Numbered from the stretch's first letter, positions 23,009 to 55,993 are shown. The stretch is 64,000 nucleotides of DNA from Stylophora pistillata (GCF_002571385.2 NW_019217845.1:227452-291451), one strand, 5' to 3'. Made by a program: numbers and translations. The notes: generated from the letters alone by a model not told the origin.

Positions 23009-25750
23009 TCACATGACCGTACAGCAAGCTGCATTCCTCCTCAGCCTACAAATTGGAGTGAGCACGGTCATCAGACGCCTTGCGATCTCTTCAGTGATGT
23101 CGAGCCGATGTACCATGATCCATTCTTCTGCAGGATTCTGACATGAACTTTGTAAACTCTGCACAGCACTTCCGTTCTTTGATCTTTTATCTTCGTTTAG
23201 AGCGCGCTCTTCCTCTGGCGTCAATGTACGTTCCAACTCATTGCTTTGGGTAGGAGTTATCGCTTCATGTTCGCGCTCAATAACTAGTTTCTCACTGCCT
23301 TCGTTTCCGTCTCGTAGTACCCCTTTGTCGGACGATACTCCTTCGTTAATGACTCGTACTTCTTCGTCTTCGGTATCGGGGTCGGTATTTGTGTTTTCTA
23401 GTGCCTCGTCTACACGCGATGTCTTAGTTTCCGGAGGAATAACATGTACTTCGGCAATGGCTTGCGTTTCGTCATCTTCGGTATTGGCATCGGTTCCCGA
23501 TGTGTCGCTTTCCGATAATTCATCGTCTTCGGTAAACGGATAAGCCAAAGCAGTCACTACTGTAAGATCCGAATCGTATCCGTCAAGATGGCGGTGACGA
23601 CCTTCAGATCTCGTTTCACTCATCTGCCTTTGGATTCCGGTGAAACCTTGGATTTCGGTGAAGGTATTTCCATCGTCGCTACTGCCCTTGCTTTCTTCCT
23701 CGTGAGTTGCTTGTTTATCTTTCTTGGCCTGCTCGTCAATAACAACTCGTACTTCGACAACATGCCCTCCTTCAGCTTTAGCGGATGTTTCTATTTGTTT
23801 GTCCTTGCGCACCAAAGTCTCTTCTGGAATTTCAACTTCAGCTTTCACTTCCTTCTGTTCGTTGGTATTGTTTTCTTGTGGCGACAACTCGTTGTTCTCT
23901 TTACAATTCAGCTGACCAGCGTTCTTTTCTTTCTTTTGATCAAGCTCTTTTGTTGTCACATTTTCCAAATCGTCCACCACGTTTGATTTCGCGTCGGTTG
24001 TTTTTGTGTCTTGCTTTAATTCAACAACAACAGCACCAGCTGTTTCTCCGAGCGCATCTTTGTCTTGGATCTCAGTTTCATCATCTTCTTTCTGCTTCTT
24101 CAACTCTCGATTGCTGTCTGTTAACTCCTTCTTTCTCTTCACTGCCTTAGAATTTTCTTCGCATTCGGTCAACTTTTCTTCATTTTCTTTTCGGGCGACA
24201 CTTTGTACATCAACGCTTTCCTCCAATCCAGAACTTTCACTCTTGTCCTCTTCGTCTATCTTCTTTGTTACTCCCATATCTGCGTTGGCAGTTTTTTCAT
24301 CCCCTTTCGATTTTTTCTTCCCTTGTAGAGCAGAACTTGGATTCGTAAACTTCCTGAATGAACGACGCAAAATATTTTCCTTCTTCTTCTTCTTGAGTGA
24401 AAGTTGTCTTGTCGCTTCATGCGCCTTGGCGGAATCGTCTTCCTTTTCTGTGCTGTTCTTTTCTTCTTCGAGAGAATCGCCCTGTTTCTCTTCAACAGAG
24501 CCCGATTTCTCCTCTGCTGTTGCCTGTTCGTCTTCCATTGCAATCAATTTGTGTTCTTCTCCATTGCCTGGACTTTTTTCTTTAAAGTCAGCTTGCTTGC
24601 GCAGTGCATCACCATCCATAACGCTTATGTCATCAGTTTCTTTGCCCACATCGATGTTGGTGCTCGGGTTGATTTCACTATTGTTTCCCTCATCTTTTTT
24701 AATTGATTTTCCTTTTGGTTTTTTCAGACTGGGTTTGTTACGCTTGAAGCTTAGAACCGTCACTTTTTTCTTCTGCTTGCTGGTCTCTTTCTTCGCAAGG
24801 TCAACTGTTTCTTCTTTCTCATCTTCTTGCTCATTCGATTCACCTTTGTTAGCGACAACAGGTATCTTCGACGAAGTCTCTTCTATGGCCATCTTCTGAG
24901 GATCTTCAGAGCTCTCGAATTTTTCAGATGGTTGCCTATGGCCGTCGCATGCGTCAGTGTAAACGCTTTGACTGAAAGTATATTTGCCTTTTGTGGTTCG
25001 ACGGAAACTTGGAAATTGCTTCATATTCAAGCCTTTGTTGTCCGTCGCTGTGGACTTGTCGTCTTGGACTCCCTCGGGAGAAGTAAACGGTTCTTTGTTT
25101 TCAATCTTCATCGTACTTTCAACAGTCTCGAATTTCGCTTCGTTAGCTTTATCCGCTGGTTCGTCACAAATCTCTTTCGCCCTCTCCTCGACGATCTTCG
25201 GATCCTCTTCGATAGTTTCACATTTCAAAATTTCAACACGTTTTTCTTCTTCGAGGGAGGTTTTGCGTTTGGAAATTTTCCCTTTCTTAGAACGGCGAAA
25301 ACTCAATCTCCCTTTCTTGCTGCTGTTGGCTTGATCGGGTTTGAAGGTTTGTTTTTCATTGCTCTTTAAGTCTTGAGTTATTTGAGTGTCCTGTTCACCT
25401 TGGCTTTCTTTGTTCGTATTTTCTTTAGCTGTTTCTTCTGTCGTTGCGATTTTCTCGCTGTCCTGTGAGGTGCTTTCTTCTAAACCGGTCGCCGTTTCGT
25501 CTGCCTCTTTCCCCTCAACGATTTCGCGTTTTCCTGCCATTTTCATCTCAGAATTATCAACGCTATTTTTTTTGTCAGAAGCAAAATAAGAACTTTCCTG
25601 ACCTTTAAACTCGCTCTCCAAATGTCCTTTAGGTTGTGTTTTTGTTGCCTCTTTTCCACTCTTCGTTTTTGGCGTCGATTCTCGGCTGTGTTCGTCTTTG
25701 GCGCCGAAAAGCTGCTCGTCGATTCCACTTGTTTGCGAACTCTCTGCCAT
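23009..25750 (-). CDS. Orphan ~913-aa acidic/Lys-rich disordered protein with polybasic SF[RK]R segments, a C-terminal EEWIMV motif and CaaX (AACCTVM)
   Basis: Uninterrupted 2.7-kb ORF; first ATG at 25750 (aaaATGG, MAESSQ); ends CCTVM-stop; no recognisable globular domain. Confidence 0.85.
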   Translation of the reverse strand: MAESSQTSGIDEQLFGAKDEHSRESTPKTKSGKEATKTQPKGHLESEFKGQESSYFASDKKNSVDNSEMKMAGKREIVEGKEADETATGLEESTSQDSEKIATTEETAKENTNKESQGEQDTQITQDLKSNEKQTFKPDQANSSKKGRLSFRRSKKGKISKRKTSLEEEKRVEILKCETIEEDPKIVEERAKEICDEPADKANEAKFETVESTMKIENKEPFTSPEGVQDDKSTATDNKGLNMKQFPSFRRTTKGKYTFSQSVYTDACDGHRQPSEKFESSEDPQKMAIEETSSKIPVVANKGESNEQEDEKEETVDLAKKETSKQKKKVTVLSFKRNKPSLKKPKGKSIKKDEGNNSEINPSTNIDVGKETDDISVMDGDALRKQADFKEKSPGNGEEHKLIAMEDEQATAEEKSGSVEEKQGDSLEEEKNSTEKEDDSAKAHEATRQLSLKKKKKENILRRSFRKFTNPSSALQGKKKSKGDEKTANADMGVTKKIDEEDKSESSGLEESVDVQSVARKENEEKLTECEENSKAVKRKKELTDSNRELKKQKEDDETEIQDKDALGETAGAVVVELKQDTKTTDAKSNVVDDLENVTTKELDQKKEKNAGQLNCKENNELSPQENNTNEQKEVKAEVEIPEETLVRKDKQIETSAKAEGGHVVEVRVVIDEQAKKDKQATHEEESKGSSDDGNTFTEIQGFTGIQRQMSETRSEGRHRHLDGYDSDLTVVTALAYPFTEDDELSESDTSGTDANTEDDETQAIAEVHVIPPETKTSRVDEALENTNTDPDTEDEEVRVINEGVSSDKGVLRDGNEGSEKLVIEREHEAITPTQSNELERTLTPEEERALNEDKRSKNGSAVQSLQSSCQNPAEEWIMVHRLDITEEIARRLMTVLTPICRLRRNAACCTVM

Positions 25751-28431
25751 TTTAAAACGAAATTTGAGAAAGATCCTAACGCTTGCGTTACAAACTTGCC
25801 TTTGCAAAATGATTAGAATTTAAATGAAAGAGAAATATCAAATCTGTCCAATGATCGTCACAGTGACAGTCACGTGATGCATATGCACGTGAAATTAACG
25901 AGTGTTTTGTGTGAGACCTTTATCGACAGGTTGACATCGAGCTTTTCGCGTCGTCAATTTAAGTATTGTGCGTTTAACTTTTATCACTGAGATGGTTTAG
26001 CTGAATTTTATACTTAGAGGAAAAGGGAAAAGTGTAGGTTCAACAGTGTAACAAACCAATCAGAATAATTTCAAAGGCGGTTCCTTTTTTTTCTGCCACA
26101 TGTTGGCAAGGTGTAAAAACTAGCACGGTGGTTTAAACACGAATGCTGCGTCACGAGTTTATTTGTGATTAACATGTGTAAAGAACGTGAACAACTACAT
26201 CAAGACACAATCTGATTTCCTGAATAAAACTTTGATATGTCTTCTTTTCGCGTGAAACGAAAATTTCCACCGAAACAACTCTTAGTCCAAACAGTAGCTC
26301 TCTCAAGAGTTCACTTTGGCGGAGCGTACTTAAAGCTCTTTTTTCAGCGCGCTTTTATCGAAATATTTCCTTCCCGAGAGCGATCAATACACGAACAGTT
26401 TTCTTCATCCTTTTCTAGGTGCTCATTATATAGCGCTGGGGTCAAGCTCCACATTTTACACGAACTTTTGGCAATGGAGTAGATATTGGCGGCAAATGGC
26501 AAAACATTCCGCATTTCCTGAACCATTTTGGTCGCTGGAGAATGTATTTTTTGTTTGCTTAATTAGAATATGCTCTTCTTTACTCGCTCCTTTTTTGGAT
26601 CTGCACGAGGATTCAACAAGTAAACAAGATAAAGTTCGAGCTTAAAATCCCTTATGACTCTCATGTGAGTTCAGTTAAGGACATTACGTCATGCTAATCT
26701 GTTGTTACGAGCCAAGTTACTTGAACTTAAAGGAAAATGCCCTGAAAATATCAGTTTGATAAGATTGAAAACACCAAAATGAACAGAATAAACCAGAAAA
26801 GGTTGAGGGTAATTAAGAGTGAAAAATATTTGTACAAATTGCAAATTACGGACTGAACTATTGAGGCTAAATTTTTGCGATATGTGAAGTATAACGCACT
26901 CGGTGGACAAATTGTTGCTTTTTTGCTACGTGAAGTGCGGGCGTGAAAAACTTAAGATTTGCGACAGAGGAGGCTAAACGAGCTTCTATGATTTTCAAGC
27001 GACTCAAACGGACTGAATTACTAGAGAAGTAAGAAGGTTTTGATTTTCATTGGTGTTGTTAGTTCGACTTTTTTCATACTAAACACAAAAATCGAAGTTA
27101 GTAAACAGGGCTATTTATAGGTGCAAGTTATCGATTATTCATTTACTGTAAGAATAACGAATCCGTAGTTTCGATAAGAAAGGACCCTTGATGAAGTGAT
27201 CTAGAATTATGGCTACCTTGAATTTGGTGAAAATAAATTGAAGTTTCAGAGGTTAGAAAATAGGGTGGTAGCTGATCCCTTCGAGGGCTTTGATGATTCA
27301 TCGACATTTGTTTTATAACGTTCTGCATGTGTAATGAAGTGCGGACAGGTTCCGTCAAATACTCTTTGGCGGAGCCGTCAAAACTTCAAACGCACGATTT
27401 TCCCCGTTTGAAAAAAATAATTGACAGACCTGGAAGCATTTGTTTGATAATCGTTTAATCTCTTGTTATGTTTTTACAGTTTAACCAGTCTTCACTCGAA
27501 ATCAAAAGAAAAAAAAAGGCATTTGGCGGTCTATAGAATAAATATTTGAGCTGGTTGTCTAAAATCTGGTACATAACGAAGACGGTGTGAACTTTTTTAC
27601 CAAAATATTTTTCTTCAAACGATGCTTTCAAAACCAAACACATTTGAACTCTTCTTAACCTAGACCATCTAAGTTTCTTTACAACCCTAAATATTTTCAA
27701 CATAATATTTGAGCGTGACAAAATTTGGAGAAATCATATGATAGCGTAATGACTTAAAGTTACGTAAAAAAAAAAAGCAAGGTAAAAAAAAAAAAGTCTC
27801 GCTCTTGGAGCTTGAAAGGTTCAGAACTGAACAAATTGCTGCGGCTATCTATAATATTTTTATCACTGTGTTAAATGAAATAATTCTTATTTTTCTGAAA
27901 CAAGCAAGGATCAACCTCGACAAAACGTTTCAGCAATATGATTATTTTTTTTCGCAATAAATTATTTCCAAAAGATAGATTTTTAAAACAATAAAAGAAA
28001 TGAATTGAAAAATCAAAATATGAAAGAGTCGATTCCTCTTTTTGTGAGCCAATGTCGAGGATTTTCTATTACATAACGTGGTTTGATTTCTTCAGAACGC
28101 TCAAAAAGGAACCCCATGACAGCATAGTGACTTCTTTAGTTATGTAATGAGAAAATTGTTAGAACAGTTCAAGTCAACCGGCTTGGTTTAAAAATCCGAT
28201 ACGATGTAAAAATGAAATATTGATTTGATTGTCAAGTTTTCTACGAAACAACAGTAAAGTTAACGAGTGGTTGCGAAACAGAAATAGGATCCAAAACATA
28301 GCTATTGTTCTTTGATCGTATCAATATCCTCATTTTTTTTTTTTTCTTTAGCTCGTGATGGTAGTTCATGCGCGAGATTCGTGTAACCCAAGTGAGCTAC
28401 TCAAACTGTCCTCCTCAAAGTTCATTACCTC

Positions 28432-29481
28432 TCACAGAAGTGTCTCTTCAATCGGTTTTGCCGCTTTTATCTTCTTTTTAGCCTTTTGGAGCATTTTTCG
28501 ACGTTTGATCGCACTTGTGAAGTACTGAGGGTATTTCTTGATCAAAGGCGCCATGAGATACACCAGAACTTGTCTAGTGGCTTCTTTAGCTTGTTGTGCA
28601 CGATTCATCAGGGAATTCCAGAGAACGTCTAGCTTCACGAGGCCAAAACCATAGGCACACAAGGACATTTCATACTGAAGTAGGGAAGAAATTGAGTGGG
28701 TCAGAAGAGAATTATCGGTGCTTAATCCAAGACCTTTGAACATCGCGTGCACTTCCAAGTAGGTCCCAGTTGAAGGCACGCCAATCTTCTCTTGTAATTC
28801 CTGGAGACTCTCAACTTTCTTGATCGCTTCCATTAATTCGTCAGCATCGGGGTCGATTTTCTCAGAAACTTCATTTTGAATCTCTTGGATTACTGTCGAA
28901 ACATCGGCGGTCACATCTGGGACTTCGATGTTTTCGCCCATGGCGTCTGTGACTCCTTCTAATCCAATATGAGGGCTACCTTCGCCTTGACTGACCAGTT
29001 GTGGAACAGCTTCCTCAACGTTTAGTTTGTCCACCGGCAGGGCGGCTACTGGAATGGTCTCTGTCGGCAGAGGATCTTGTTTTTCGTTTTCGTCCCGTCG
29101 ATTCTTCCTCCTCATTGCAAATGATCGTCCAAGTGTGAGACCACGTCTTAGTCGACTCTTAGACTTTTCCTTTTCGTCTTCCAGTGTTTTTGCTTGTCCA
29201 TCCTCTGTTTCTAGTTCATCGCCAGAACTTGGAATGGGCAACTCGCTAGAAGTGACGAGCGAACGATGGCGTCTGTGTCCCTTTTTGACCTTCTTCTTCT
29301 TCTCTGGTTTAGTGATTTCCTGTTCAGGCGTTTCTGGTTTTGAATTTTCTGGTTGAGGAGTTTCTTCTTTAGGAATTTCTGGTTCAGAAAACTCTTCTTT
29401 TGAAGTTTCGTCTTCTTTTTTATCACTTATCCAGGGAAGTAATCCAACGAGGCCTCGCTTGACGGAAAAGCTCTCTGCCAT
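28432..29481 (-). CDS. Orphan ~349-aa protein: disordered acidic/basic N-half, helical C-terminal region, ends ETLL (class I PDZ-ligand-like)
   Basis: Single ORF from ATG 29481 (aacATGG, MAESFS); TATA box and CCAAT boxes directly upstream. Confidence 0.8.
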   Translation of the reverse strand: MAESFSVKRGLVGLLPWISDKKEDETSKEEFSEPEIPKEETPQPENSKPETPEQEITKPEKKKKVKKGHRRHRSLVTSSELPIPSSGDELETEDGQAKTLEDEKEKSKSRLRRGLTLGRSFAMRRKNRRDENEKQDPLPTETIPVAALPVDKLNVEEAVPQLVSQGEGSPHIGLEGVTDAMGENIEVPDVTADVSTVIQEIQNEVSEKIDPDADELMEAIKKVESLQELQEKIGVPSTGTYLEVHAMFKGLGLSTDNSLLTHSISSLLQYEMSLCAYGFGLVKLDVLWNSLMNRAQQAKEATRQVLVYLMAPLIKKYPQYFTSAIKRRKMLQKAKKKIKAAKPIEETLL

Positions 29482-29551
29482 GTTCACTTGAATAGCTACA
29501 ATGACATAATGACAACAGCTGAACTTTGTTAGAAAAAATATATGAATTCGT

Positions 29552-30889: not shown

Positions 30890-30920
<31 letters not shown>

Positions 30921-32155: not shown

Positions 32156-32794
32156 TTAGAGAATATGACAAAAACGCTCCGGTTCAACTTCTTTGTATGG
32201 TGTGCACTTCCTTCTTAAATAAAGTGTTCGCTTTGCCTCTTCCTTCTCGAAAGCTTGAAGATTGAGATCAACTATGGTCCATTCCCCGATTGAGGAGAAA
32301 AATACGGGACTCTCAGCGATTCCAAAGACGTAATTATCGGGATTTGGAAGCGATCCACGGCAAGCATTGGAACTTTTAGAACTGGCTTGGTTTTCGTCCA
32401 ATGTTTCCTGTGTCTTTCCATAATAGCAGTTCGGTTTGTGTTTCTCCATTTTGTGTCTCACGCCGTCCGATTTCTTTCTTTTCCACAAATGAAGATTAAG
32501 ACTCACATATTCAAAATCTCCGTTTGGGGTATTAATATTTGGATGTTTGTCAGTTTGTAGCTGTGCGATTTCCACCGGCATCAAATCGTGCGTAGTCCGA
32601 GTTTTGTTTTGGTAATTAGCTATCTCTGTTGGTGTGACCACTACGCTTGTTTCGGTAATTAACCCATCAGCTCTCAAAACGTGGGTTTGATCCTCATGAA
32701 AGTCGTAATTCCACTCCAATTGACAACTCGGGGTCGCTGAACAGTCGCAGCGTAAGTTGTTCCGATCGCTGGGTGGGAACTGGTTTCTAGTCAT
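32156..32794 (-). CDS. Orphan 212-aa protein with GEWTIVDL motif and C-terminal CaaX (CHIL, geranylgeranyl-type)
   Basis: Single ORF. A polypyrimidine/AG acceptor ~14 nt upstream of the ATG suggests a 5'UTR intron. Ends CHIL-stop. Confidence 0.72.
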   Translation of the reverse strand: MTRNQFPPSDRNNLRCDCSATPSCQLEWNYDFHEDQTHVLRADGLITETSVVVTPTEIANYQNKTRTTHDLMPVEIAQLQTDKHPNINTPNGDFEYVSLNLHLWKRKKSDGVRHKMEKHKPNCYYGKTQETLDENQASSKSSNACRGSLPNPDNYVFGIAESPVFFSSIGEWTIVDLNLQAFEKEEAKRTLYLRRKCTPYKEVEPERFCHIL

Positions 32795-37312: not shown

Positions 37313-37690
37313 TCACATAACACAACAACATACTTGATCCTTTCCATAAACTGAACTCAAAAGAAGCAAGTCCTCTTTCACTTCGTGGGTAGACTTGTTC
37401 ATATCCACATAGATCCATTCTTCGTACGCCTTGTTGGCGTCAGGTGAAAGTTCTGTTGATCTTTCCATCGACGATTCTCGAAAGTCGGCAATATCCTGAT
37501 CTGTGATAAAGACTGGCTCGTCTCTCCCGAATCCAAATTCAAGCTCTTCGTCATCACTATCAGCTTTTAAGGGAGTCGTTTCTTCCGTGACTTGTTTTAC
37601 GTCGATATTAATGTGGTCCTCCACTGGATTGTCGTCGACTTTAAGATCAATGTTTTCGATAGTTGGCGTTTCTGTTCCACTCGCTGCCAT
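37313..37690 (-). CDS. Orphan 125-aa acidic protein with EEWIYVDM motif and C-terminal CCCVM (CaaX plus palmitoylatable Cys)
   Basis: Single ORF, start tacATGG, ends VCCCVM-stop. Confidence 0.78.
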   Translation of the reverse strand: MAASGTETPTIENIDLKVDDNPVEDHINIDVKQVTEETTPLKADSDDEELEFGFGRDEPVFITDQDIADFRESSMERSTELSPDANKAYEEWIYVDMNKSTHEVKEDLLLLSSVYGKDQVCCCVM

Positions 37691-38389: not shown

Positions 38390-40487
38390 CTACCTCTCAT
38401 TTAAGATCAAAATTTTTGTACATCATTTTTTTCCATTTTCGTGTTCAGTGTGTCTCCTTCACCTACTCTGCCAAATTTCAGTTTAGACTGAGCATCAGAA
38501 ATATCTTTTTTCGGGCCGTTAAATTCACGATTTCGCGTCCGCCATTATTTGACCATGTTCCGGAAGTTGATCGTTGGACTTAGAGGAAGTGACGTCAAAG
38601 GCTTAACGCGAAAATCTCACATCGCAAAATGTCAAGCAAATTAACATAACAGAGTGCTTTACTCTATTCTTACAATAACTAAACAAAAATGACTGGGCAT
38701 CGAGGCGTAATTCAAAGCTGAAGTAATCGTGCAGACCATGCTGCAGGTATTTCTCTGCATCGGCGCCTTGCAAATAGATCAGAGCGGGAAAAACGGATGC
38801 GATTTATGCGACCTCGCCGAGTAAACTTCAATCCTACAGAAATATTTGTGATCTATTCTGAACACTTTTCGGAGGACTGTTTCGAGAGATCTGTTTACTT
38901 TGAAGGATATAGGGGAAGAATTCTGTCGGGTTCAGTGCCTACCGTTCAAGAAGAGAAGGGACAAGAAAAACCATCCTCAGTGCGATCTCGACGCCGGAAA
39001 GCGAAGTCTACGAACCTCCACGGATTTTGTCACCTTTACATATGAGCTGATCAATATCCACCTTTAACAACTCTCTGGCAGAATACCTTACACAAAGGAA
39101 AGTACTCGGTGAACATTGTAAATAAGAATGATAAAATAGCCGAATTGAGGATTGAGATTTCTGACCTCAAAGAGCTCACTTTTATACAAAAGAGATGAAA
39201 AATATAATTGTGTGCTCTGATTCTAAAAAAAGCTGGCTTTAATATCAGCGAAAGCAGAACAAACAGCTTAAGACACAGAGCGTAAAAACACTTTAAAATG
39301 TAGGCTTGCAGCCAAAAAACCGAGAAAATGAAAATTTCTTTAAAAACCTGTCAAACTATCAACCATCTGACAGCCAAGTCAGCGTGCTATCAAAGGGTCT
39401 CAAATTCATCCCAACGCCCGTGACAAACGAATTTAAAATCAGGCCAACTTTTGCGAGATTTATTCGCAAGACGAATGCGCCTCCGTTACACCTTTCACGG
39501 ACAAAACAAAGAACCACTTCTGTTTCATATCAAACTGAATGCCACCGGTTCAGTCTTCTATCGCCCTTCAGAGCTACTTGGAAAATTGTCATAACGCTAC
39601 TTGCAGACTGCATCTAAGCCAAAAAATACTTTGTAACGCAATGAGGTCACGGCTCTAAAAGAGTTGAAACAAACTCTGCTTTAAACCTCACCGAAGCAAC
39701 ACAACAATAGTCATCATGAATAAGACAGAAAAAACAAAAGAGGCCAAAGTGCAACTCAACAACAGAGTTCACTTCAAACCTCTCAAAGCACCGATAGTAA
39801 AAAACACGTAGGAAAGGGTTAATGAGATCATTGACCAAATGCATCGGGGAAAACACATTGATGGCTTAGAAATGGCTTTCACAAACTCCCAATATCCGCC
39901 TTCGGATACACAATTAGCCATTGCCGAAAACTATTTTTACTAATCACCCGATCATTTCTTACAAAAAAGGAAAATCCCTTACGACAAGCAAAAATACAGT
40001 TCGAAGGCGATAAAGCGATGCGACCACAAAAGCCACATGGGGAGTCCGTGCCGTTCTGTGTTTATCTTTATTCGCATGGCAAAAATTCATCGTTTGTCGG
40101 CGCAAAACTATCCACAGAAGCTTCAGATGATTTCTGGGACAATTCATCGTCTGAAAAAGTCGACATTTCCCGACTGACAACGAAACAGTTCTCAAAAAAG
40201 TAATATGTGTGATTCTCTGTGCAGCGAACAAAGAGAGTTGTGACAAAGCAAAGCATAAGTTTGTTGAGCCTTTGACGTCATGATGACGTTTTTGCGGGCT
40301 CGGCTGGAACATGTTTTCAGCAATGGCGGACGATTTTTGGACGACTTTGAAGCGGTAAAAATTGGTCATCGAAGGTTTGTTTTGAGTTTTTAATGGCAAA
40401 AAGGGTCTTAACTTGACCCAATTCAACATTGTGTAAACAATTTAGGCCAAAATAAAATGGTCAATTTTCGTCTCAGGGGCACTTTAA
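38390..40487. mobile_element. Decayed composite transposon region: THAP-domain remnant, Penelope-like RT fragment, Kolobok-like end
   Basis: 38797-39045 encodes RRVNFNPT..VIYSEHFSEDCFER (THAP CSxHF-like); 39306-39900 encodes frameshifted NLSNYQ..SQVSVLSKGLKFIPTP...RMRLRY (PLE ORF N-terminus); ends ggggcacTTTAA. Confidence 0.55.
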
Positions 40488-40589
40488 CCTNNNNNNNNNN
40501 NNNNNNNNNNNATTTGTTTTAAGAACATCAAATTTCCGCGGGGCAACTGTCAGCCGATAGTTCCTCGACAGAAACACTATTGTTTAGCT

Positions 40590-41547: not shown

Positions 41548-42318
41548 CTACATTATGGAACACTTTCCACCTCGTCCACATCCTATGCATTTTACAGTTT
41601 TTTCGTCGAGTTCGTCAACACTCCGCGTAATTTCTCGCCTTTCGTTCTTCAAGCTCTGTTCCAGCCTCAAATCAACGTCTTCAAACTCTGCTTCCCCCAA
41701 GCTAATGGCTTCTTCAACCGGCGATTCTCCCTGTTTTAATGTGTACGTTTCTTCCACAATTTTATTTTCGAACACAAGCGCGGAAAGTTCGGGTTTGAAC
41801 GAAGATTTTACGACATCATCATGAACACTATCTCGTGAGTTGACACTCTCATTCGATTTCCGAGTGGCATAGAAATCTTTTCCGAGCGATGATTCAATCA
41901 CGAACTTCGGCTTGTCGTTCTTTGATTTCGATTTCGTCGATTTCGAAGCTTCTTTAGGTTTCTTCTCGCTTTCAAATGGAGCTGTTCCGAATTTGTCTTT
42001 GTTGATGTCCTTTTTGGATGGCTCTTTGATGTTTTCCGCTTCGTGTGGTTTTTCAGCTTCTTTTTCAATTTCCTTCTCAGGTTCTGAAGCAAATCCAGGT
42101 TCTTCTGAATCAGGACTTATAACTTTCCGTTGTCGACTACGCGACCGCCTGGCATGCTGGGCGTACTCACCCAATGTGTCAATCGCAGGTCCTTCGTTCT
42201 TTGTTCCCTCTTTCTCAGCTCTTTCGTCAACTTGTCTTTCAACAGCTTTTTCAGTTGGGATTAAAATTTTCAAATCTGGTGTCTTGCTCTTGTTTTCTAA
42301 TGTGACGGCTTCCTTTTC
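41548..42318 (-). CDS. In-frame continuation of the SxIP gene beyond the TAG; ends EFEDVDL...CIGCGRGGKCSIM (CaaX)
   Basis: Same frame as 42319-45021 (offset 771 nt = 257 codons); open from the codon after the TAG to CSIM-TAA; no ATG until the last codon. Confidence 0.72.
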   Translation of the reverse strand, partial: EKEAVTLENKSKTPDLKILIPTEKAVERQVDERAEKEGTKNEGPAIDTLGEYAQHARRSRSRQRKVISPDSEEPGFASEPEKEIEKEAEKPHEAENIKEPSKKDINKDKFGTAPFESEKKPKEASKSTKSKSKNDKPKFVIESSLGKDFYATRKSNESVNSRDSVHDDVVKSSFKPELSALVFENKIVEETYTLKQGESPVEEAISLGEAEFEDVDLRLEQSLKNERREITRSVDELDEKTVKCIGCGRGGKCSIM

Positions 42319-44947
42319 CTAGACTTTAGTTGCTTCTTCTCTGACATCTGTGCCATTTTGAACAACATTTTTTCCAGCTATTAAATCTTTGACACCCACT
42401 TCGGCTTTCCCCACATCCACATCTTCTTTCGTTGACGGTTTTTCCGCGATTTTCGACTCCTTTGGTGGCTCATTTACGGTACTGGCTGGTTTAAGAACAA
42501 TGTCATCGATGTTAACCTTCTCTTTAAAGTTTTTGTTGTCGTCCCTCACAGAGAAAACGTAACTATCATCCAGTTCTAGTTGGTTCTCTGTATTGATGTC
42601 GGGAGCATAGCTTTTCAACACTTCACTGATTAAGTCCTCTGCCTCTTTTGAATCCAGCATCTGCAGGTCCGAATCATGCGATATCTCTTCGAGTTCCTCG
42701 ATTTCTTTCTCTTGTTTCAAGAATTCCTCGTCCTCTTCCAAATCCGCAGCCGGTACAACCACTTCAATGGGCTCATCGCGAAATATTTGTTCCATTTTTC
42801 TCGCCTCGGAGAAAATGTACTTATCCAGGGGCGATTCTGAAGAGAAATTTTCTCGTATTGGAGTACTGGGAGGGGTAGCAGGCTCCTTGTCGAAAGAAGG
42901 CTGCTTACCACCAAAAGTTGGTATTCCTGTTCTGGGCAACTCTCCGTTGGGTGAGTTCGCCGGGGACTTTGGCGTGGCTGCATGCTTCGGGAACGAAGGA
43001 GTTTTACTCTTAGTTTCCACGGGTGAGGATGCCACTGCAGGTATACCCGTCGGCACGGTCTCTTTCTCTGCGCTTGAGGTTTTACGCGTTAATTTGTCGC
43101 CAGCATAACCTGGAATCTTGCTCGACGGTGTCAATTCGCCAGGCTTCGGAATCCCACTTGCCTTCGATGCGATTGGCAGGGAACTTGGTGGAGACTTTGC
43201 CGCGGTTTTAGGTTCTGGAATCCTGGACCCTCCAGCTGTAGGGACCTTTGACTCAAGGGTCGCGTTGGACAATGTAGAAGGAAGTGTTGGAGTGCGTGAC
43301 GAGTTCCCAGGGGGTCCATCTGGTTCCGTAGCTTTGGACCCTCCCACAGTGGAAAGCTTTGATTGCGGTGTTTTAGTTCCAGAGGATGCTGACGGCGATT
43401 TAGCAAAGGATGGAATGCGGCTGACCCCCATGGGGATGCCGCTGCCCTGCGAGGAGGAAGATGCATTGGGCATCTTACTTTGAGAACCAGTAGCAGGAGA
43501 ATGTGCCTCTCCTCCGTTTTGCGACGCCTGCCCTTCATTCTGACTGTCTTTGCGAGTCACGGAAGGTATTCTAGACTTGGGAATACTAGACTTGGAGAAA
43601 GACGGAATTTTGCTGACTTGCTTGGCAGGCTCAGGACCATTTGGTATACTGGTAGGATCTTTATTTTCCTTTGCTGAATCAGGTTTATTGTGTGAGGATG
43701 CTATGGATGGAGAGATTTTGCTTCCTGCCTTGTCTTTCTGCAAAGCGCTCTCCTTACGTCCTGTTGTGGGTATCTGGGATTTATTTGAGGACGGAATTTT
43801 ACTCTTCGGAGGAGTGCGTTCCTCAGCGCCATTTTTCTTCGTCATTGAAGGTATGCGAGAAATGTGCGAGTCTGTTTTTTCAGCGCTTCCTGGCGACCGA
43901 ACAAGCGATGGAATCTTCGACATCTCACTGCTGCTTGCCGAGCGGGAGCGACCACTCTCTATTGAACTCTTAGAAGGAGACTTATTCAACGAGCTTGAAG
44001 TTAAACTTCGATTACTAGACGTTTTGCATATATTGCCTCCTGTATCCTCGTGAGTTACAGTTGGCGAGTTAGTTCTCAATTGACCGCGCGGCCGAACAAT
44101 GTCACTTTTTTCTCTCCTTACACTCGGCGATGCACGATTTTTAGTGACGTCACTGCGTTCACGTTGAAGTCCAGCTGGTGATTGTGAACGCGGGCTCGAC
44201 GCAATCCCGTTTTCCCGCTTTAGACAAGAGGATGAATTTGATCGCGCGCTAATCGGGAGAGAATTGTTATTATTAGCTGATAATTGGGTTCGACGTGGTC
44301 TAACAATATCGCTTTTCTCACGACGAAGGCTACCGTTTTTCAAAGAGTCTTGAGCTGTCTGAGGAGACCTGGAGGGTGGTCCTGGTTTTTTAGGGGCAGA
44401 AAAACTGGCGCTGCGTCTCGGCCGTGCACCCTGCTTATCTTGGGCGTTGTCCTGTTTAAAACCGCCCTGGTTTGACTTGGCGACCGGTTTTACAATGCGT
44501 GGTTTATTTGTTGCTTGGCAACCGTTGTTGACTTGTATAAAAAGCGGATAGCGGCTTGAAAAATCGTTCGGATCGTGGGAATGCTCGGGTAATGAGCACA
44601 CACTATCAGCTGTAGTTTCAACACAATCACTACCAGATCCGCTGCTTAATTTGGACTCTGATCTATTTAACGTTGTTCCGTTACAGTTCACTCCGTTAAG
44701 ACGATTTTCACTTTCGCTCTCGCTGCGTTTTCTCTGAGTCTGACTGAAGTCCCCTGACCTACGCCTGAGATAAGGTCTTTTTCTGAGCGCTACATCACTA
44801 TTGCTTCTTCTGACTTTCTTTGGTTCTGGAACTCTTTTGAGCGGGGCTGGTCTAAATTGAATCTGGGGTACAGGTGATATTCCAAAGCTGGGGCTGGCAC
44901 CAAAGATGGCGGACGCGTTCCGTGCTCTGCTCGATGGCTCAGGGAGA
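42319..44947 (-). CDS. Main exon of a large Ser/Pro/basic disordered protein with ~16 SxIP (EB1-binding) motifs; putative microtubule plus-end-tracking protein
   Basis: 900-aa ORF whose 5' end contains the splice acceptor tttgtatgttttctcag (exon starts at 44947, phase 2); repeated SKIP/SRIP/SQIP/SGIP/TGIP; ends at an in-frame TAG at 42319-42321. Confidence 0.82.
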
Positions 44948-47414
44948 CTGAGAAAACATACAAAGGCAATTAATTTTGTTGGCTGGCAAGAAATAATCAT
45001 GGACGTTTGCAAGTCGTTCACTTAAAGGATCAGTTAAGCCTCTTTCATTAAATTCCTTTGTTGTTTTATTTCTTTATTTTATCCCAAGCAGTTATGAGTT
45101 TATAGATTTCTGATCCTTTGTCATAACAGCTGTTTTCTGATGCTAATAATGGCTTGGAATAAATCTCAGCCAAACAAACAATTTTGCTCCCGAACCTAAA
45201 CATAGCACGCAAGTTCATTAAAAAATATCACTAAACTAACAATAACACTGAGATAAATATCTCCGATTTTGGGGATAAAAAAAGAAAACTCAGAGTATAT
45301 ACATCATTATATCGTTCAAGTAAAAGGAGACTCCAAATATAGTCTCTGAAATACAACCACACAGAGGTACAAAGCTTTTCTGTTGATTTTCCAAAGAACT
45401 GGAATAAATGCACGCGAAGGGTTTATTTGTTTTGTGCATCGGTGGTTTTCCCTTACAAACAATTATTGTAAAGTTCTGTTGTGTGTTTAGCTATGAATTA
45501 TGCAAAGAAACAAGAGAACTGGCAAAAATTAGGCGATCAACAATCTAAAAGCGCTCTCAAGCTGTTATGCTTGCTTTAAAAACGTGCCAATCTCATCTGA
45601 CAACATTTCTTGAAAATTACGTGAAAAGACCATACCAGCGTTTAATCACTGAAAGAGTTTAATTCACTTGAGTAAACTACTGCTTCGTTAAGAAGGCGTA
45701 ACTTCGATAAAAGTTTTGGAAATAACTCGAAAAAAGTTTTTAAAGAATATCGCTAACAGGCGCTCCTAGAGGGCTGGATCTTAATTGATTTGCGGCAATA
45801 TACCAGAATTGAAACACGTGGAAAAATCCCATAATTACGTTGACAATGGAAGCATGTTGAGCTGGGTAAAAAACAAGAACAATATCCAACAGTGAACAAA
45901 GAACGAAGCGGTCTGTATTGGAAGCCACGACAATGATCTAATGATAACTTTGATCGATGATTCTAAAGTAACCTAACAAAATACTAATCCCTGAAATCTA
46001 TGAAAGAAATTGCATTTGTACATTTGCATAAGCGTGCTGTTTTCTTTGGCGCTGAAACAAAAGCGTTGGTGGTTAAAATCGTTCCGCCTTCAGTCAAACA
46101 CACGCTTTCTTACTAGAATTTACACAAACTCGCCGACAAAGTCAAAACTCATTTAAGTTGCGTAATAACTGCTTCGTATAAATCTAGAACGAACTTTGCA
46201 CTAGTTATAAAATTCGTCGAATATTATAATTACAATATCTACGGTAAGCTTGATAAATCAATCGCTTTGTTTTTTTTTATATCAAGAAAACCATAACTTT
46301 GGTAAACAAAGTTAACAATTGCTACGAAGAAAAGCTTTTGCATTAAAATTACTTCATCTATTGTCGATGATGAGCTACGATCTTGCTTTCAGCCTGTCTT
46401 TTAAATTTATCATGCATCAAAATTAAAATAAAATAAACCATGTTGGTTATATTGATAACGTCTGAAACGCGCCCTAGAAAAGTGGAGCAACTAATTTGTA
46501 ATGAAAAGGGATAACTCTATTAATCTTCAGCATATTCCATTACCAGCAAAAATTAACTTATAACGTTGATTGAAATTTTCTCTATTCATTGAGAGAGGTG
46601 AATAATGTAAACAGTTTAAACCGCATAATAAATCTGTCTTCGTGCCCCCGTAACTTAGCCCCACAATACGATTTTAAACACTATGGTAATTCTTATATTG
46701 TAGGGATGGAAACCTTTTTGGCTGTTATCAACGCCTTTAAAATTTATTTAAAAATTCAATCCATTTAAAGCACAAGAACTTTGGCGCATTGATTTCGCCA
46801 GCCCAACGGCCTTCTCTCTCAGTATGAAATATAATGTTCTCGCGTTCTAATCTGGAAGAAACAGTGAAACCTTAAGGGAGTTAGGTCAAGAATATCTCTT
46901 GTTTTGGAAACAAACACATCTTGTAGAGATACCCTAGCAGTGTTTAAACGCACGAGGATTCCAAGAATAATAACTTAAAAATTGACAGAATTCAGGGCAT
47001 AGAAGACAGCTGCCGATAAAAAGGCTTTCAAATTCAAAACAAAATTGAAACATCAGCTTCGTCAGTTTCCGTAAATTTTGAAAACCTCTTCTGTCGCCAG
47101 TCAAAAATATCAAGTACTATTATTTCTGAATCTCGACTTTTCTTCGAGTCGATTTGACGAAACCTTTATAAAACTATACATAAAATAGAGAGCTATGTAA
47201 AGAAATTATCAAAACTGTACATTTTCAAACCGGATATGTGTAAGTCAAACACGCTTCAAAATTCGCCAGCCTGTCGAAATTTCTTTCCAAATATAAACTC
47301 TCAAACAAAATTGAAGTTTCTTATTTAACGATCAGAACTGTCAATGATGACCAAAATCTCCCCTCTCGCTCGTGATAATCAGAAGCGCTGAATGTTTTAT
47401 CATCTGATACTTAC

Positions 47415-51254: not shown

Positions 51255-51437
51255 TAGACCACTTTCATAAATGGCTGCCGGATTAATATTCTTTTGTTTA
51301 AATTTAAGTTAGCCTTTCTGGCCTCGTTCTCTAGTACAAAATTCAAAAGAATACATTATCTCAAGCGAGGCCAGAAAGGCTAATTTCAATTTCAACAAAA
51401 GAATATTAATCCGGCAGCCATTTTTGAAAGTGGTCAA
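51255..51437. mobile_element. Hairpin MITE
   Basis: gaccactttc..aaatggctgccggattaatattcttttgtt...tagcctttctggcctcg arm and its inverse. Confidence 0.7.
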
Positions 51438-54400: not shown

Positions 54401-55795
54401 AACAAATTTACTATAGAACTAAGTTGTAAGGATTCTCCACAGTATGAAATTATCTTTTATACTTCCTTGCTTACTATGAAACCATAAACAATTTAGCGAT
54501 TGTTTTCAATTAAGAGATGATGTCACCATGCCTTTATTTTCTTTCGTTTCAGTTTCCGAGTTCACTTTGCCATTTTTCAGGGCACTCAAAGGAAAATTTC
54601 GACTACTGCTATGGCAATTGATGGTTTCAGTGGGAACGTTATCATAAGTGAACATTCTTGTTATTTTAGTTGCAACTGAAAATATTTATATCGAAAATAA
54701 AGTCTAGTTTTGTTTAAACAGATGTCATTCAGGTTGGAATTTGGAACAAATTTCAGAAGTTCGCAATAACAAACTGACAGCTTTTGTCGTAAAATATCAA
54801 CTGGATAAGCGTGACTTCGAAGAAGTAAATATTTTTAAAAAATTGAAGGTTCAAATACGAGCTAAGGAAACTAATACAACAGCTTATTCTGTCGATAGTC
54901 TAACTTTAGTCAAACACGCATCTTGCGATCTTCATTATATTGTTACTCAAACTGTTACATATAAATGATTTAGAGCGAATCAAAGGTCTTCCCGTTATGT
55001 TTCGAATCTACAGGCACAAAATGTTTAAAGGAATAGTATTTTTCTACAAGTCGTGTAATTGTTGTACATAATATGGAGCGGTTTACTCGCTCGAAACCGA
55101 TGTTGACTATCTTACTTGAATCTAAATATGGAGCACGAATGGGGTTTGACAAAATTACCGATATATCCAGTCCCCGCCGACTTTCAAATCTACTGGGAGC
55201 GACGAACACTGTTTTCTATGTTTTCAAACTAGCGTGTGACAAATTTTGTAATTATCAGTCATAATTTTGCTCGAAAGTTCATGATATTTATCACAGATTT
55301 ATAAAAATCTAATTTTTCTTTATTACCAGGCAACAGATCGAAAAATAACATTACAAATGCTTGATGGTTTCTTGTTTAGTTCCAGACTAGCTTTTAAGAA
55401 AAGGATGTATTTAAAAGCGTTCGTTGTTCTGCTCATTGTCTCGTTAGTCTTAAAAAATCGTAGAATGAAAGTAGATGATGGAGATGTTGGTCTTCAAAGC
55501 CTTTGATACGTAGAGATTTTGACAAGTACTTCGGTGAAAACATAAAGACTTTTTGTATGACACTTAAAACTACTTTGAAAATATATTTTTGATGGGTTCA
55601 GTTAGCGTAAAAAGCGAAGAGAAGCAGTTTTAAATACAAATGTTCTCTAACACCTGCCACTTTCGAATCATTCATCATTCCCGCGAAAAATGAAAACATT
55701 CGAACACACACCCTATTTCAATCCCAGGTTTCGTTACAGCTTGACATGACAAAAAAATACTTGAAGAAACCTGTACTATCATAACTTGTACTTAC

Positions 55796-55993
55796 AGAGA
55801 TGGATCTTTGCGATCAGTTTGCTCCCGAGGCAAATCCAAAATCCTGCAAATGGAAGAGGTTTGAAGATGTGAACTGCGCGAGTAACATTAAACAATACGC
55901 CACTCCCAATCCACCAATGGCGATTATGTATTCGAATCAAGCCAATAAAGTTTATGTTTACCTCTTGCGTTCTTTAAGCCGTAAGCCTTCCAT
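55796..55993 (-). CDS. Candidate distal first two coding exons of the SxIP gene (55993-55962 and 55843-55796; MEGLRLKERKRILDLPREQTDRKDPSL)
   Basis: attATGG start, donors gtaaac and gtaagt, acceptor tttgcag; both junctions phase 2 and in frame with the 44947 exon; CCAAT at ~56237. Confidence 0.45.

What the first reader, a model, noticed from the sequence alone, without database searches (positions are those of the whole stretch)
23009..55993. Co-oriented cluster of five orphan disordered proteins, four sharing a C-terminal 'acidic-W/FxxV ... CaaX' module
Seen: five consecutive minus-strand genes whose CDS lies wholly or almost wholly in one exon, beside an intron-rich neighbour. Four end in CaaX boxes: AACCTVM (23009), RFCHIL (32156), QVCCCVM (37313) and CIGCGRGGKCSIM (41548). 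Each of those four has a similar motif 34-45 residues from the end, followed by a likely helix. The N-terminal parts show no evident similarity and range from 125 to ~1150 aa. Known: CaaX directs farnesyl or geranylgeranyl addition, adjacent Cys are palmitoylated (as in paralemmins and H-Ras), and CaaX ends occur in only a small minority of proteins, so four in a row is unlikely by chance. Inference: an old tandem family of lipid-anchored adaptors that kept a common membrane/docking tail while diversifying its disordered payloads. It sits beside endolysosomal TPC1. In a coral it could act on endolysosome, phagosome or symbiosome membranes (speculative).
Basis: partly seen in the sequence, partly recalled or inferred. 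Interest (0 to 1): 0.9.

Follow-up and report, generated by a model that had tools for sequence, protein, structure and literature searches.

The report
Lipid-anchored disordered protein cluster in coral
A row of coral-specific genes encodes floppy proteins that share a conserved docking motif placed just before a lipid-anchor signal. One of these genes is already published, by accession number only, as the marker of the coral cells that house symbiotic algae.

Summary
The window is Stylophora pistillata. The four CaaX-ending minus-strand ORFs are real, and the acidic W/F-x-x-V motif sits 37, 41, 34 and 45 residues from their ends.

Shared tail:
- Shuffle tests support it for g1-g4 (z 6.3), g3-g4 (z 4.3) and weakly g3-g5 (z 2.7).
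- g2 is unrelated.
- g3 (41/41 orthologues) and g4 (33/33, including Nematostella) keep motif, spacing and CaaX.
- No Pfam family matches, paralemmin included.

Caveats:
- The g5 tail lies behind an in-frame TAG and has no Met of its own.
- AlphaFold2 gives no confident helix (whole-protein pLDDT about 35).
- g2 and g1 appear to share one transcript.
- No g1 or g5 orthologues could be fetched.

The motif fits the LC3/GABARAP-interacting (LIR) consensus, and g1 and the g4 family fit the GABARAP-selective form. Binding is untested: the complex prediction gave no answer.

New here: XP_022783975.1 (g1 isoform X2) is the published in-situ marker of alga-hosting cells, and its probe maps inside g2.

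Best reading (about 0.45): an anthozoan family of prenyl/palmitoyl-anchored disordered adaptors with an ATG8-type docking motif.

Earlier notes of this scan on this same stretch (s1-791513, s1-791680, s1-791778) raised the LIR reading, the SxIP array and the TAG.

The parts
23009..25750 (-). g1 CDS, 913 aa, a single coding exon. It is acidic and disordered, with four basic SF[RK][RK] patches. It is an exact NCBI protein; isoform X2 (XP_022783975.1, 898 aa) skips 15 internal residues and keeps the tail.
23111..23128 (-). g1 motif EEWIMV. It holds the only Trp in 913 aa. It matches the xLIR and GIM patterns. Asp at +7 and Ile at +8 fit the published LIR C-helix rule.
   Evidence: patterns from PMC5119064, PMC5538626 and PMC8727931
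23012..23023 (-). g1 CaaX box CTVM, preceded directly by a second Cys (AACCTVM)
28432..29481 (-). g2 CDS, 349 aa. It has no CaaX and no shared tail. Its C-terminal third is richer in hydrophobic residues; no structure was predicted for it. It contains the published host-cell ISH probe (28899-29474).
28423..28436 (-). Two candidate splice donors around g2's TGA. ct|GTGAGA overlaps the stop and would fuse g2 in frame to g1, as in the old model PFX29695.1. GAG|GTAATG, 6 nt further on, keeps the stop.
25795..25805 (-). Candidate splice acceptor (..caaag|G) about 50 nt upstream of g1's ATG, used by the fused model
32156..32794 (-). g3 CDS, 212 aa, predicted disordered, with orthologues across Scleractinia
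32270..32287 (-). g3 motif GEWTIV (xLIR match; 40 of 41 orthologues match)
32159..32170 (-). g3 CaaX box CHIL. CxIL or CxLL in 41/41 orthologues, so a geranylgeranyl-type X = L. A basic YLRRK patch lies upstream.
37313..37690 (-). g4 CDS, 125 aa, an exact NCBI protein, predicted disordered. Orthologues occur in Scleractinia and Nematostella.
37406..37423 (-). g4 motif EEWIYV. It holds the only Trp. GIM match in 33/33 family members. Strict xLIR fails only at the Tyr; the EEWIFV orthologues pass.
37316..37327 (-). g4 CaaX box CCVM, preceded by another Cys (VCCCVM)
41548..42318 (-). g5 tail frame, 256 codons open after the TAG, with no Met. It ends ..KCIGCGRGGKCSIM.
41674..41691 (-). g5 motif AEFEDV (xLIR match, not GIM). 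The upstream ESPV..SLG stretch resembles g3.
41551..41562 (-). g5 CaaX box CSIM
42319..42321 (-). In-frame TAG between the g5 body and tail, with no plausible intron around it. The flanking RNA has no unusual fold (z 0.55).
42322..45021 (-). g5 body frame, 900 codons, Ser/Pro/basic-rich. Its 5' end looks like a splice acceptor, so upstream exon(s) are likely but were not located.
42919..43920 (-). Array of 16 SxIP-type motifs in the g5 body (1.9 +/- 1.3 expected from shuffles)
40491..40511 (.). Assembly gap, intergenic between g5 and g4. It was not filled.

Best explanation
The cluster encodes an anthozoan-restricted family of intrinsically disordered proteins that share a two-part C-terminal module.

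(a) A CaaX box. It is farnesyl-type (-M) in g1, g4 and g5 and geranylgeranyl-type (-L) in g3. Adjacent Cys residues (g1, g4, g5) or a basic patch (g3) are the usual second membrane signals. Together these would fix the C-terminus to the cytosolic face of a membrane.

(b) An acidic aromatic motif, E-E/G-W-x-x-V-D, lying 34-45 residues upstream. Its most likely role is as a beta-strand docking motif of the LC3/GABARAP-interacting (LIR) type. It is GABARAP-selective in form in g1 and the g4 family.

The variable N-terminal parts carry other short motifs: an SxIP array in g5 and basic SF[RK][RK] patches in g1. The proteins would therefore act as membrane-anchored adaptors that bring ATG8-family proteins, or ATG8-decorated membranes, together with different payloads.

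The g2-g1 transcription unit is expressed in the alga-hosting gastrodermal cells.

Shown:
- the sequences
- conservation of motif, spacing and CaaX in the g3 and g4 families
- predicted disorder
- absence of known domains
- the published ISH probe mapping in g2

Inferred:
- lipidation
- ATG8 binding
- common descent of all four tails
- translation of the g5 tail
- expression of g1 itself in host cells

Sub-confidences:
- real lipid-anchored family with a shared functional tail: about 0.8
- the motif is an ATG8-binding LIR: about 0.4
For: - ORFs and tails.
- Tail similarity: g1-g4 z 6.3, g3-g4 z 4.3, g3-g5 z 2.7. hhalign g4 family against g1 tail P 2.6e-4, g4 against g3 families P 8.6e-4.
- Six-frame search of the whole 398-Mb genome with the tail profile finds only these four copies.
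- Orthologues: g4 family 33/33 keep W-[IV]-x-V, with W to end 33-34 residues and a terminal CaaX. Five apparent exceptions are ORFs that read the TGA stop as W.
- g3 family 41/41 keep CxIL/CxLL, with W to end 41-42 residues.
- The tails are the best conserved parts: majority fraction 0.81 against 0.55 in g3, and 0.89 against 0.77 in g4.
- Nematostella A7T103 is a g4 member.
- The motif matches the published xLIR pattern in g1, g3 and g5, and the GIM pattern in g1 and all g4 members.
- It lies in regions modelled as disordered.
- The single Trp of g1 and of g4 is the motif Trp.
- Host-cell expression: PMC8162421 Fig. 4C and Table S3. The primers map at 29455-29474 and 28899-28918.
- Precedent for a predicted LIR about 50 residues from a prenyl anchor: zebrafish Fam83fa (PMC11495952).
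Against: - There is no binding evidence. The complex prediction of a GABARAP with the g4 tail gave no answer, which counts neither way.
- xLIR-type patterns are common, about 1.5e-3 per position. By shuffling, 3-10% of such tails would contain one.
- Conservation covers the whole 40-residue tail, not only the core. The module may therefore be larger than, or different from, a LIR.
- The published C-helix rule (acidic +7, hydrophobic +8/+11) is met only by g1 (and the sequences).
- g3 and g5 do not fit GIM.
- The g5 tail is behind a TAG and is statistically the weakest member.
- g1 and g5 orthologues were not obtained. The profile search returned none, but at its threshold that is uninformative.
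- Farnesyl plus palmitoyl anchors usually go to the plasma membrane or Golgi, not to lysosome-like organelles (established knowledge, e.g. paralemmin).
Confidence: 0.45

Rival explanations
1. Same lipid-anchored family, but the conserved aromatic motif is not an ATG8 docking site. It would instead be part of a longer membrane-proximal module. That module could bind another partner, such as a trafficking adaptor, a prenyl-binding chaperone or a cytoskeletal protein. Alternatively it could help membrane insertion or sorting of the anchor.
For: - The whole tail is conserved, not just the four core residues. Examples are VDVNKSTFEVKENLLLLSSVYG in g4 and FEKEDAKR..YLRRK..SYKEVEPE in g3.
- A Glu at +11 is shared by g1, g3 and g4. 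No LIR rule predicts it.
- LIR-like patterns are frequent by chance.
- The complex prediction gave no support (not evidence either way).
Against: - The core plus acidic flank is a textbook LIR.
- It is invariant for the depth of Hexacorallia.
- It sits in predicted disorder.
- No other catalogued motif that I could recall fits as well (own knowledge, not a test).
Confidence: 0.3
2. g5 is not a functioning member in this genome. The TAG is genuine, the protein ends at ..EEATKV as a cytosolic SxIP protein, and the CaaX tail is an untranslated relic. It could alternatively be made only by rare readthrough.
For: - There is a single in-frame TAG with no credible intron (the GT..AG options are 12-42 nt).
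- The tail frame has no Met.
- No RNA structure flanks the stop (z 0.55).
- Only one genomic copy exists for comparison.
- g5 is the weakest tail match.
Against: - 256 codons stay open after the TAG in DNA of about 41% G+C. I estimate this as about 1e-7 by chance from base composition. The stop is therefore very recent, allelic, a base error or bypassed.
- The tail keeps the ESPV..SLG..F-x-x-VDL and CaaX elements.
Confidence: 0.35
3. There is no common descent. Unrelated neighbouring genes acquired a CaaX box and an acidic aromatic motif independently, and the cluster is a coincidence or the result of convergent selection.
For: - The N-terminal parts are unrelated.
- g1-g3, g1-g5 and g4-g5 tails are at background similarity.
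- hhalign probabilities are modest, 23-42%.
Against: - With Cys at about 2% frequency, four of five adjacent genes having Cys at -4 is of order 1e-6 by chance (my estimate).
- The similarity chain g1-g4-g3-g5 is significant at each link.
- The genes have the same orientation, similar spacing of motif to anchor, and no other copy in 398 Mb.
Confidence: 0.07
4. The genes are divergent cnidarian members of a known vertebrate family of lipid-anchored proteins: paralemmins (PALM1-3) or the neighbouring AKAP2-type anchoring proteins.
For: - The architecture is the same as paralemmin: acidic, largely unstructured, with a CaaX preceded by extra Cys (PMC2148134).
- The g1 segment after the motif (ITEEIARRLMTVL) is amphipathic in the manner of AKAP helices. 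This rests on my own reading and was not tested.
Against: - Pfam Paralemmin (PF03285) gives no hit at E <= 1 on any of the six ORF products.
- It gives no hit in the six-frame genome either. However, that search rang in no control genome, so it proves little.
- No invertebrate paralemmin apart from a lancelet fragment is known (PMC3405040).
- The profile search of 1.84 billion representatives returned only cnidarian-type g3/g4 relatives and one bacterial chance hit.
Confidence: 0.05

Closest known systems
Paralemmins (PALM1, PALM2, PALM3; Pfam PF03285)
   Same: They are acidic, mostly unstructured proteins. They are held on the cytosolic face of membranes by a C-terminal CaaX box with extra, palmitoylatable Cys residues just upstream (PMC2148134, PMC3405040). 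The g1, g4 and g5 ends (CCTVM, CCCVM, KCSIM) are of this type.
   Different: There is no detectable sequence relationship. The paralemmin and MIF motifs were not found by the Pfam model. Paralemmins are vertebrate proteins, with one lancelet fragment. Paralemmins are not described as carrying a LIR-type motif at a fixed distance from the anchor.
Membrane-anchored LIR proteins. These are tail-anchored or reticulon-type autophagy receptors such as FAM134B, SEC62, RTN3 and STX17, and GIM adaptors such as PLEKHM1.
   Same: They have an acidic [W/F]-x-x-[V/I/L] core in a disordered stretch close to a membrane anchor. g1 and the g4 family fit the GABARAP-selective [W/F]-[V/I]-x-V form defined on PLEKHM1 (PMC5538626). 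g1 also has the acidic +7 and hydrophobic +8 residues of 'core + C-helix' LIRs (PMC8727931).
   Different: Here the anchor is a prenyl/palmitoyl lipid, not a transmembrane or reticulon segment. ATG8 binding is untested. g3, g4 and g5 do not fit the C-helix rule. There is no sequence homology to any of these families.
FAM83F / zebrafish Fam83fa
   Same: It has a prenylated C-terminus (CaaX or CIQS) with an iLIR-predicted LIR (DTFEFI) about 50 residues upstream. Deleting the last 55 residues abolishes lysosomal targeting (PMC11495952). This is the closest published case of the same two-part tail logic.
   Different: FAM83F has a folded DUF1669 domain and is a vertebrate family. Its LIR-ATG8 binding is also unproven. 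No homology was seen to the coral proteins.
SxIP +TIP proteins (EB1-binding microtubule plus-end trackers), for the g5 body only
   Same: It has many SxIP motifs in a basic, Ser/Pro-rich disordered region: 16 against about 2 expected.
   Different: The link between SxIP arrays and EB1 comes from general knowledge and was not tested. No CH, CAP-Gly or other +TIP domain is present. A CaaX end on such a protein would be unusual, and here it lies behind a stop codon.

Membership tests
CaaX prenylation substrates | Cys at position -4 followed directly by the stop codon | tested here: met
   g1 CTVM*, g3 CHIL*, g4 CCVM*, g5 CSIM*
CaaX prenylation substrates | Aliphatic a2 residue, and an X residue typical of FTase (M, S, Q, A) or GGTase-I (L) | tested here: met
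   a2 is V or I in all four. X = M in g1, g4 and g5 and X = L in g3. Orthologues have CxVM/CxIM/CVIL/CVVQ (g4) and CxIL/CxLL (g3). The rule itself is established knowledge.
CaaX prenylation substrates | The box is conserved in orthologues | tested here: met
   g4 33/33 and g3 41/41. Not testable for g1 and g5 because no orthologues were obtained.
CaaX prenylation substrates | Actual isoprenylation, and palmitoylation of neighbouring Cys | not testable with these tools
   Needs metabolic labelling or mass spectrometry
LIR/AIM-containing ATG8 interactors | Core [W/F/Y]-x-x-[L/I/V] with an acidic N-terminal flank (xLIR pattern of iLIR) | tested here: met
   EEWIMV, GEWTIV and AEFEDV match. EEWIYV fails only at position 5, and the EEWIFV orthologues pass.
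LIR/AIM-containing ATG8 interactors | The motif lies in a disordered, accessible region | tested here: met
   AlphaFold2 with alignments gives pLDDT below 50 over the whole of g4 and g3. The Atlas model of g1 has mean pLDDT 0.37.
LIR/AIM-containing ATG8 interactors | Binding to an ATG8-family protein through the LIR docking site | tested here: inconclusive
   Complex prediction of a 117-aa GABARAP (L017:113-463) with g4 residues 70-125 returned 'no answer', score 0.03. That method is not validated for peptides.
GABARAP interaction motif (GIM) | [W/F]-[V/I]-x-V | tested here: met
   Met by g1 (WIMV) and 33/33 g4-family members. Not met by g3 (WTIV) or g5 (FEDV).
'LIR core + C-helix' LIRs (AnkG/B, FAM134B, FYCO1) | Acidic residue at +7 and hydrophobic residue at +8 or +11 on an amphipathic helix | tested here: not met
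   Only g1 fits (D at +7, I at +8). g3, g4 and g5 have L, K and L at +7. No confident helix is modelled.
Paralemmin family (PF03285) | Paralemmin motif and overall profile match | tested here: not met
   No Pfam hit at E <= 1 on any ORF product. The six-frame genome search was blank but had no positive control.
Paralemmin family (PF03285) | CaaX preceded by two further Cys residues and a basic cluster | tested here: met
   g1 ..RLRRNAACCTVM and g4 ..VCCCVM partly fit. This feature alone is not diagnostic, since H-Ras and Xlcaax-1 share it.
SxIP +TIPs (g5 only) | SxIP motifs in a basic Ser/Pro-rich disordered region | tested here: met
   16 observed against 1.9 +/- 1.3 in shuffles. EB1 binding is not testable here.

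The most novel reading that the evidence does not exclude
The cluster is a cnidarian invention: a class of prenyl/palmitoyl-anchored GABARAP-binding adaptors. The g2-g1 product works in alga-hosting cells at the symbiosome or its surrounding membranes. There it would either tether ATG8-decorated single membranes (LC3-associated-phagocytosis-type) or shield the symbiont compartment from autophagic digestion. Its paralogues would couple the same anchor-plus-LIR tail to microtubule plus ends (g5) and other payloads.
Probability: 0.13. Interest if true: 0.85.

Novelty: new variant of a known kind. Interest (0 to 1): 0.6.

Why it matters
How a coral cell keeps an alga alive inside a lysosome-like compartment instead of digesting it is a central open question. 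It also bears on bleaching.

The most specific published marker of the alga-hosting cell in Stylophora has so far been only an accession number with a misleading automatic name ('myosin-2 heavy chain-like'). This analysis shows three things:
- The marker gene belongs to a conserved, lineage-restricted cluster.
- Its products are disordered, probably lipid-anchored proteins.
- They carry a motif of the type that recruits ATG8/GABARAP.

That turns the marker into a concrete, cheaply testable hypothesis, using peptide binding, Cys and Trp mutants, and localisation. It also defines a small, tractable family: the 125-aa g4 has a Nematostella orthologue, and that animal can be genetically manipulated.

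If the LIR reading fails, the family is still a clean example of one conserved motif-plus-anchor tail serving diverse disordered payloads.

Tried and rejected
- Complex prediction (GABARAP from L017 with g4 residues 70-125) returned 'no answer', score 0.03, and the controls were not run. It is not evidence either way.
Orthologous loci and synteny could therefore not be fetched.
There is no read-level evidence on the TAG, the g2-g1 junction or expression.
Because of the length filter it returned only truncated ATG8s. A full-length GABARAP was then taken from a metagenome/metatranscriptome contig.
- The coral's own ATG8 genes are multi-exon.
- The ESM Atlas gave no usable look-alikes for g4 or the g1 tail.
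- PDB sequence search of g2 found nothing.
- Scans of genome contigs and viral contigs for g1 and g5 tails were blank, as expected for prokaryotic and viral collections.
- An exact look-up of a guessed g5 protein (from the first ATG to the TAG) found it is not in the collection.
- The whole-genome DNA search found no second copy of the g5 tail region.
- RNA folding around the TAG shows no structure.
- g1 against g2 by BLASTP shows no similarity.
- Rejected readings: a paralemmin homologue; a YxxΦ sorting signal in g4 (the Tyr is Phe in half the orthologues); and the five g4 ORFs that seemed to lack a terminal CaaX (each reads the TGA stop as W, a translation-table artefact).


Full report
**What is there.**
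- g1: 23009-25807, with the CDS from the ATG at 25750, 913 aa, ending ..AACCTVM.
- g2: 28432-29487, 349 aa from its ATG, ending ..EETLL, with no CaaX.
- g3: 32156-32794, 212 aa, ending ..RFCHIL.
- g4: 37313-37690, 125 aa, ending ..QVCCCVM.
- g5: a 900-codon body frame at 42319-45021 and a tail frame at 41548-42273, ending ..KCSIM.

The aromatic residue of the acidic W/F-x-x-V motif lies 37, 41, 34 and 45 residues from the end. I checked all motif and CaaX coordinates by translation. The assembly gap at 40491-40511 lies between g5's stop and g4's start and touches no ORF. I did not try to fill it, and continuity across it is untested.

**Species and gene models.** Exact look-ups show the window is Stylophora pistillata. 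The 125-aa g4 and the 913-aa g1 are NCBI proteins on a 977,424-nt scaffold. XP_022783975.1 ('myosin-2 heavy chain-like isoform X2', 898 aa) is g1 with a 15-residue internal skip and the same tail. Older models fused neighbours: PFX29695.1 joins g2 and g1, and PFX29696.1 joins g4 and g3, the latter by splicing away g4's CaaX. Many Logan/ENA contigs of about 1.0-1.8 kb carry the complete g2, g3 or g4 ORF, 79 contigs for g4 alone. That looks like assembled transcripts, but the tool does not say whether they are RNA.

**Is the shared tail more than chance?** None of the six ORF products matches any Pfam family.
- g1 has one Trp in 913 residues and g4 one in 125. In both it is the motif Trp. The motif is the only xLIR-type match in g1 and in g5.
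- Smith-Waterman scores of the last 65 residues against 2000 shuffles give g1-g4 z 6.3, g3-g4 z 4.3 and g3-g5 z 2.7. The other pairs, and every pair with g2, are at background.
- Profile comparisons agree. The g4 family against the g1 tail gives P 2.6e-4, g4 against g3 families P 8.6e-4, and the g3 family against the g5 tail only P 0.4.
- The evidence therefore forms a chain, g1-g4-g3-g5, with g5 the weakest link and g2 outside it.
- A six-frame search of the whole 398-Mb assembly with the tail profile finds only these four copies.
- Taking Cys at about 2%, four of five adjacent genes with Cys at -4 is of order 1e-6 by chance. This is my estimate, not a tool result.

**Conservation.**
- g4 has 125-aa orthologues throughout Scleractinia. 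EEWI[YF]VD and CCx[VI]M are invariant.
- g3 has orthologues in both robust and complex corals, Oculina and Montipora among those named. Their tail GISESPVFFSSIGEWT[IV][IV]DL..YLRRK..SYKEVEPE..CxIL is nearly invariant.
- Over all fetched sequences, 33/33 g4-family and 41/41 g3-family members keep the core. The distance to the end is 33-34 and 41-42 residues respectively, and all keep a terminal CaaX.
- Five g4 ORFs that seemed to run on past the CaaX all continue with W. They read the TGA stop as Trp, which is a translation-table artefact of the ORF caller.
- The tails are the most conserved parts of both proteins.
- A profile of the tails searched against 1.84 billion representatives returned 13 hits. 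All were g3- or g4-like except one bacterial chance match. One is Nematostella vectensis A7T103 / XP_001622459.1 (153 aa..DEWIMVD..CCVVQ). The g4 lineage therefore predates the split of anemones and stony corals.
- g3 and g4 orthologues repeatedly sit on contigs of identical length, in one case only 16,647 nt. This hints at conserved linkage.
- No g1 or g5 orthologue was obtained. At the score needed in so large a library, that blank says nothing.

**Qualifications to the observation.**
- First, the g5 tail is in the same frame as the body but separated by one TAG (42319-42321). The only GT..AG pairs around it span 12-42 nt. The tail frame contains no Met, so it cannot be translated on its own.
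- 256 open codons after the stop in 41% G+C DNA would be about 1e-7 by chance (my estimate). The stop is therefore recent, allelic, a base error or bypassed.
- There is no second genomic copy to compare and no unusual RNA fold around it (z 0.55).
- Second, AlphaFold2 with the orthologue alignments models g4 and g3 as disordered throughout (mean pLDDT 35 and 33) with no confident helix after the motif. 'Disordered' is supported; 'likely helix' is not.
- Third, g2 and g1 appear to be one transcription unit, as described below.

**What the motif looks like.**
- The core with its acidic flank fits the canonical LC3-interacting region. The published xLIR pattern (PMC5119064) matches EEWIMV, GEWTIV and AEFEDV. 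EEWIYV fails only at the Tyr, and the EEWIFV orthologues pass.
- The GABARAP-selective form [W/F]-[V/I]-x-V (PMC5538626) is met by g1 and by all 33 g4-family members, but not by g3 or g5.
- The rule for LIRs with a C-terminal helix (acidic at +7, hydrophobic at +8 or +11; PMC8727931) is met only by g1.
- Such patterns are common, about 1.5e-3 per position. They occur in 3-10% of shuffled tails. The match is a lead, not proof.
- To test binding I needed an intact ATG8. I took an uninterrupted 117-aa GABARAP ORF from a metagenome contig (L017:113-463). It is 60/62 identical to the coral's last exon.
- The complex prediction with g4 residues 70-125 returned 'no answer'. This is no evidence either way.
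- The other half of the module follows established rules. -M ends are farnesyl-type and -L ends geranylgeranyl-type. Neighbouring Cys residues (g1, g4, g5) or a basic patch (g3) are the usual second signals, as shown experimentally for paralemmin (PMC2148134).

**The unexpected link to symbiosis.**
- A full-text search for the accession numbers found one paper, the S. pistillata cell atlas (Levy et al. 2021, PMC8162421).
- There XP_022783975_1 is the 'predicted host cell marker' validated by in-situ hybridisation. [quoted passage not shown] 4C).
- The probe primers in its Table S3 map uniquely in the window at 29455-29474 (-) and 28899-28918 (+). This is a 576-bp probe inside the g2 ORF.
- The NCBI transcript that encodes g1 therefore evidently contains g2.
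- At g2's stop the sequence reads ctt ctg tga gag gtaatg. One donor, ct|GTGAGA, overlaps the stop and is used by the old fused model, joining ..EETLL to QVCNAS.. at an acceptor about 50 nt before g1's ATG. A second donor, GAG|GTAATG, lies 6 nt further and keeps the stop.
- The NCBI proteins start at g1's own Met, and all assembled g2 ORFs end at ..EETLL. The second donor, or an unspliced form, therefore seems the commoner.
- The atlas counted reads over whole NCBI gene intervals. Host-cell specificity is thus shown for the gene and, by ISH, for the g2 exon. For g1 itself it is inferred.
- The paper says nothing about CaaX, LIR, autophagy or the symbiosome for this gene.

**Interpretation.**
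- The best reading is an anthozoan-restricted family of disordered proteins that share an anchor-plus-docking tail and differ in their payloads.
- g5 carries 16 SxIP motifs where about 2 are expected. This is the signature of EB1-binding plus-end trackers (general knowledge).
- g1 carries four basic SF[RK][RK] patches. One of them is removed in isoform X2.
- I put about 0.8 on 'real, lipid-anchored, shared functional tail' and about 0.4 on 'the motif binds ATG8 proteins'.
- The main rival is that the whole 40-residue tail, which is conserved end to end, is a module for some other partner.
- Paralemmin is the closest known architecture but not a relative. The Pfam model does not match, and no invertebrate paralemmin beyond a lancelet fragment is known (PMC3405040).
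- The closest published case of the same tail logic is zebrafish Fam83fa. It has a predicted LIR about 50 residues before a farnesylated end, and that region is needed for lysosomal targeting (PMC11495952).
Farnesyl-palmitoyl anchors usually mean plasma membrane or Golgi, so the membrane in question is open.

**Verdict.** Its mechanism is a plausible but untested inference. What raises it above an ordinary orphan cluster is that one member is part of the marker gene of the coral's alga-hosting cells. Earlier notes of this scan on the same stretch had already raised the LIR reading (s1-791513), the SxIP array (s1-791680) and the TAG (s1-791778). I reached the LIR reading independently before seeing them and tested the three as far as the tools allowed.

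Noticed in passing
window 28899-29474 (-): The published in-situ probe for the 'host cell marker' XP_022783975_1 (Levy et al. 2021, Table S3) lies wholly inside the g2 ORF. It does not lie in the ORF that encodes XP_022783975.1 (g1).
   Followed up: yes
window 28423-28436 (-) and about 25800 (-): Two splice donors 6 nt apart straddle g2's TGA. One would fuse g2 in frame to g1 (1263-aa old model). The other leaves a two-ORF transcript.
   Followed up: partly
window 42319-42321 (-): A single in-frame TAG lies between the g5 SxIP body and its CaaX tail. The tail frame has no Met. There is no intron candidate and no RNA structure.
   Followed up: partly
window 42919-43920 (-): There are 16 SxIP-type motifs in about 330 residues of the g5 body, against about 2 expected.
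   Followed up: yes
window 32498-32515 (-): g3 has a second, conserved LIR-like motif (FEYVSL here, SEYVSLNL in orthologues). It resembles the tail motif EWTIVDLNL. It sits in the only other conserved block of the protein.
   Followed up: partly
window 23009-25750 (-), g1 residues about 146-165, 245-256, 330-350, 450-470: There are four basic SF[RK][RK] patches, MARCKS/AKAP12-effector-like by eye. RefSeq isoform X2 removes exactly one of them (LNMKQFPSFRRTTKG). g2 has similar basic stretches.
   Followed up: no
window 25739-25750 and 29470-29481 (-): g1 and g2 both begin MAES. Otherwise they show no similarity (BLASTP E 1.5).
   Followed up: yes
proteins P0001, P0021, P0025, P0027, P0195: These Logan ORFs of g4 orthologues run past the CaaX, and each continues with W. 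The ORF caller read the TGA stop as Trp (code-4 model). This is an artefact worth remembering when using that collection.
   Followed up: yes
G000:C62:526877-527635 (+) (loci L005, L012): The coral's GABARAP-type ATG8 gene lies on the same contig, about 236 kb from the cluster. Three further ATG8 loci are on C16, C151 and C205. This is too far to count as linkage.
   Followed up: no
window 39306-39617 (+) and 39959-40429 (-): ORFs between g4 and g5, next to the assembly gap, look like transposon debris (..LSKGLKFIPTP..). I did not check them.
   Followed up: no
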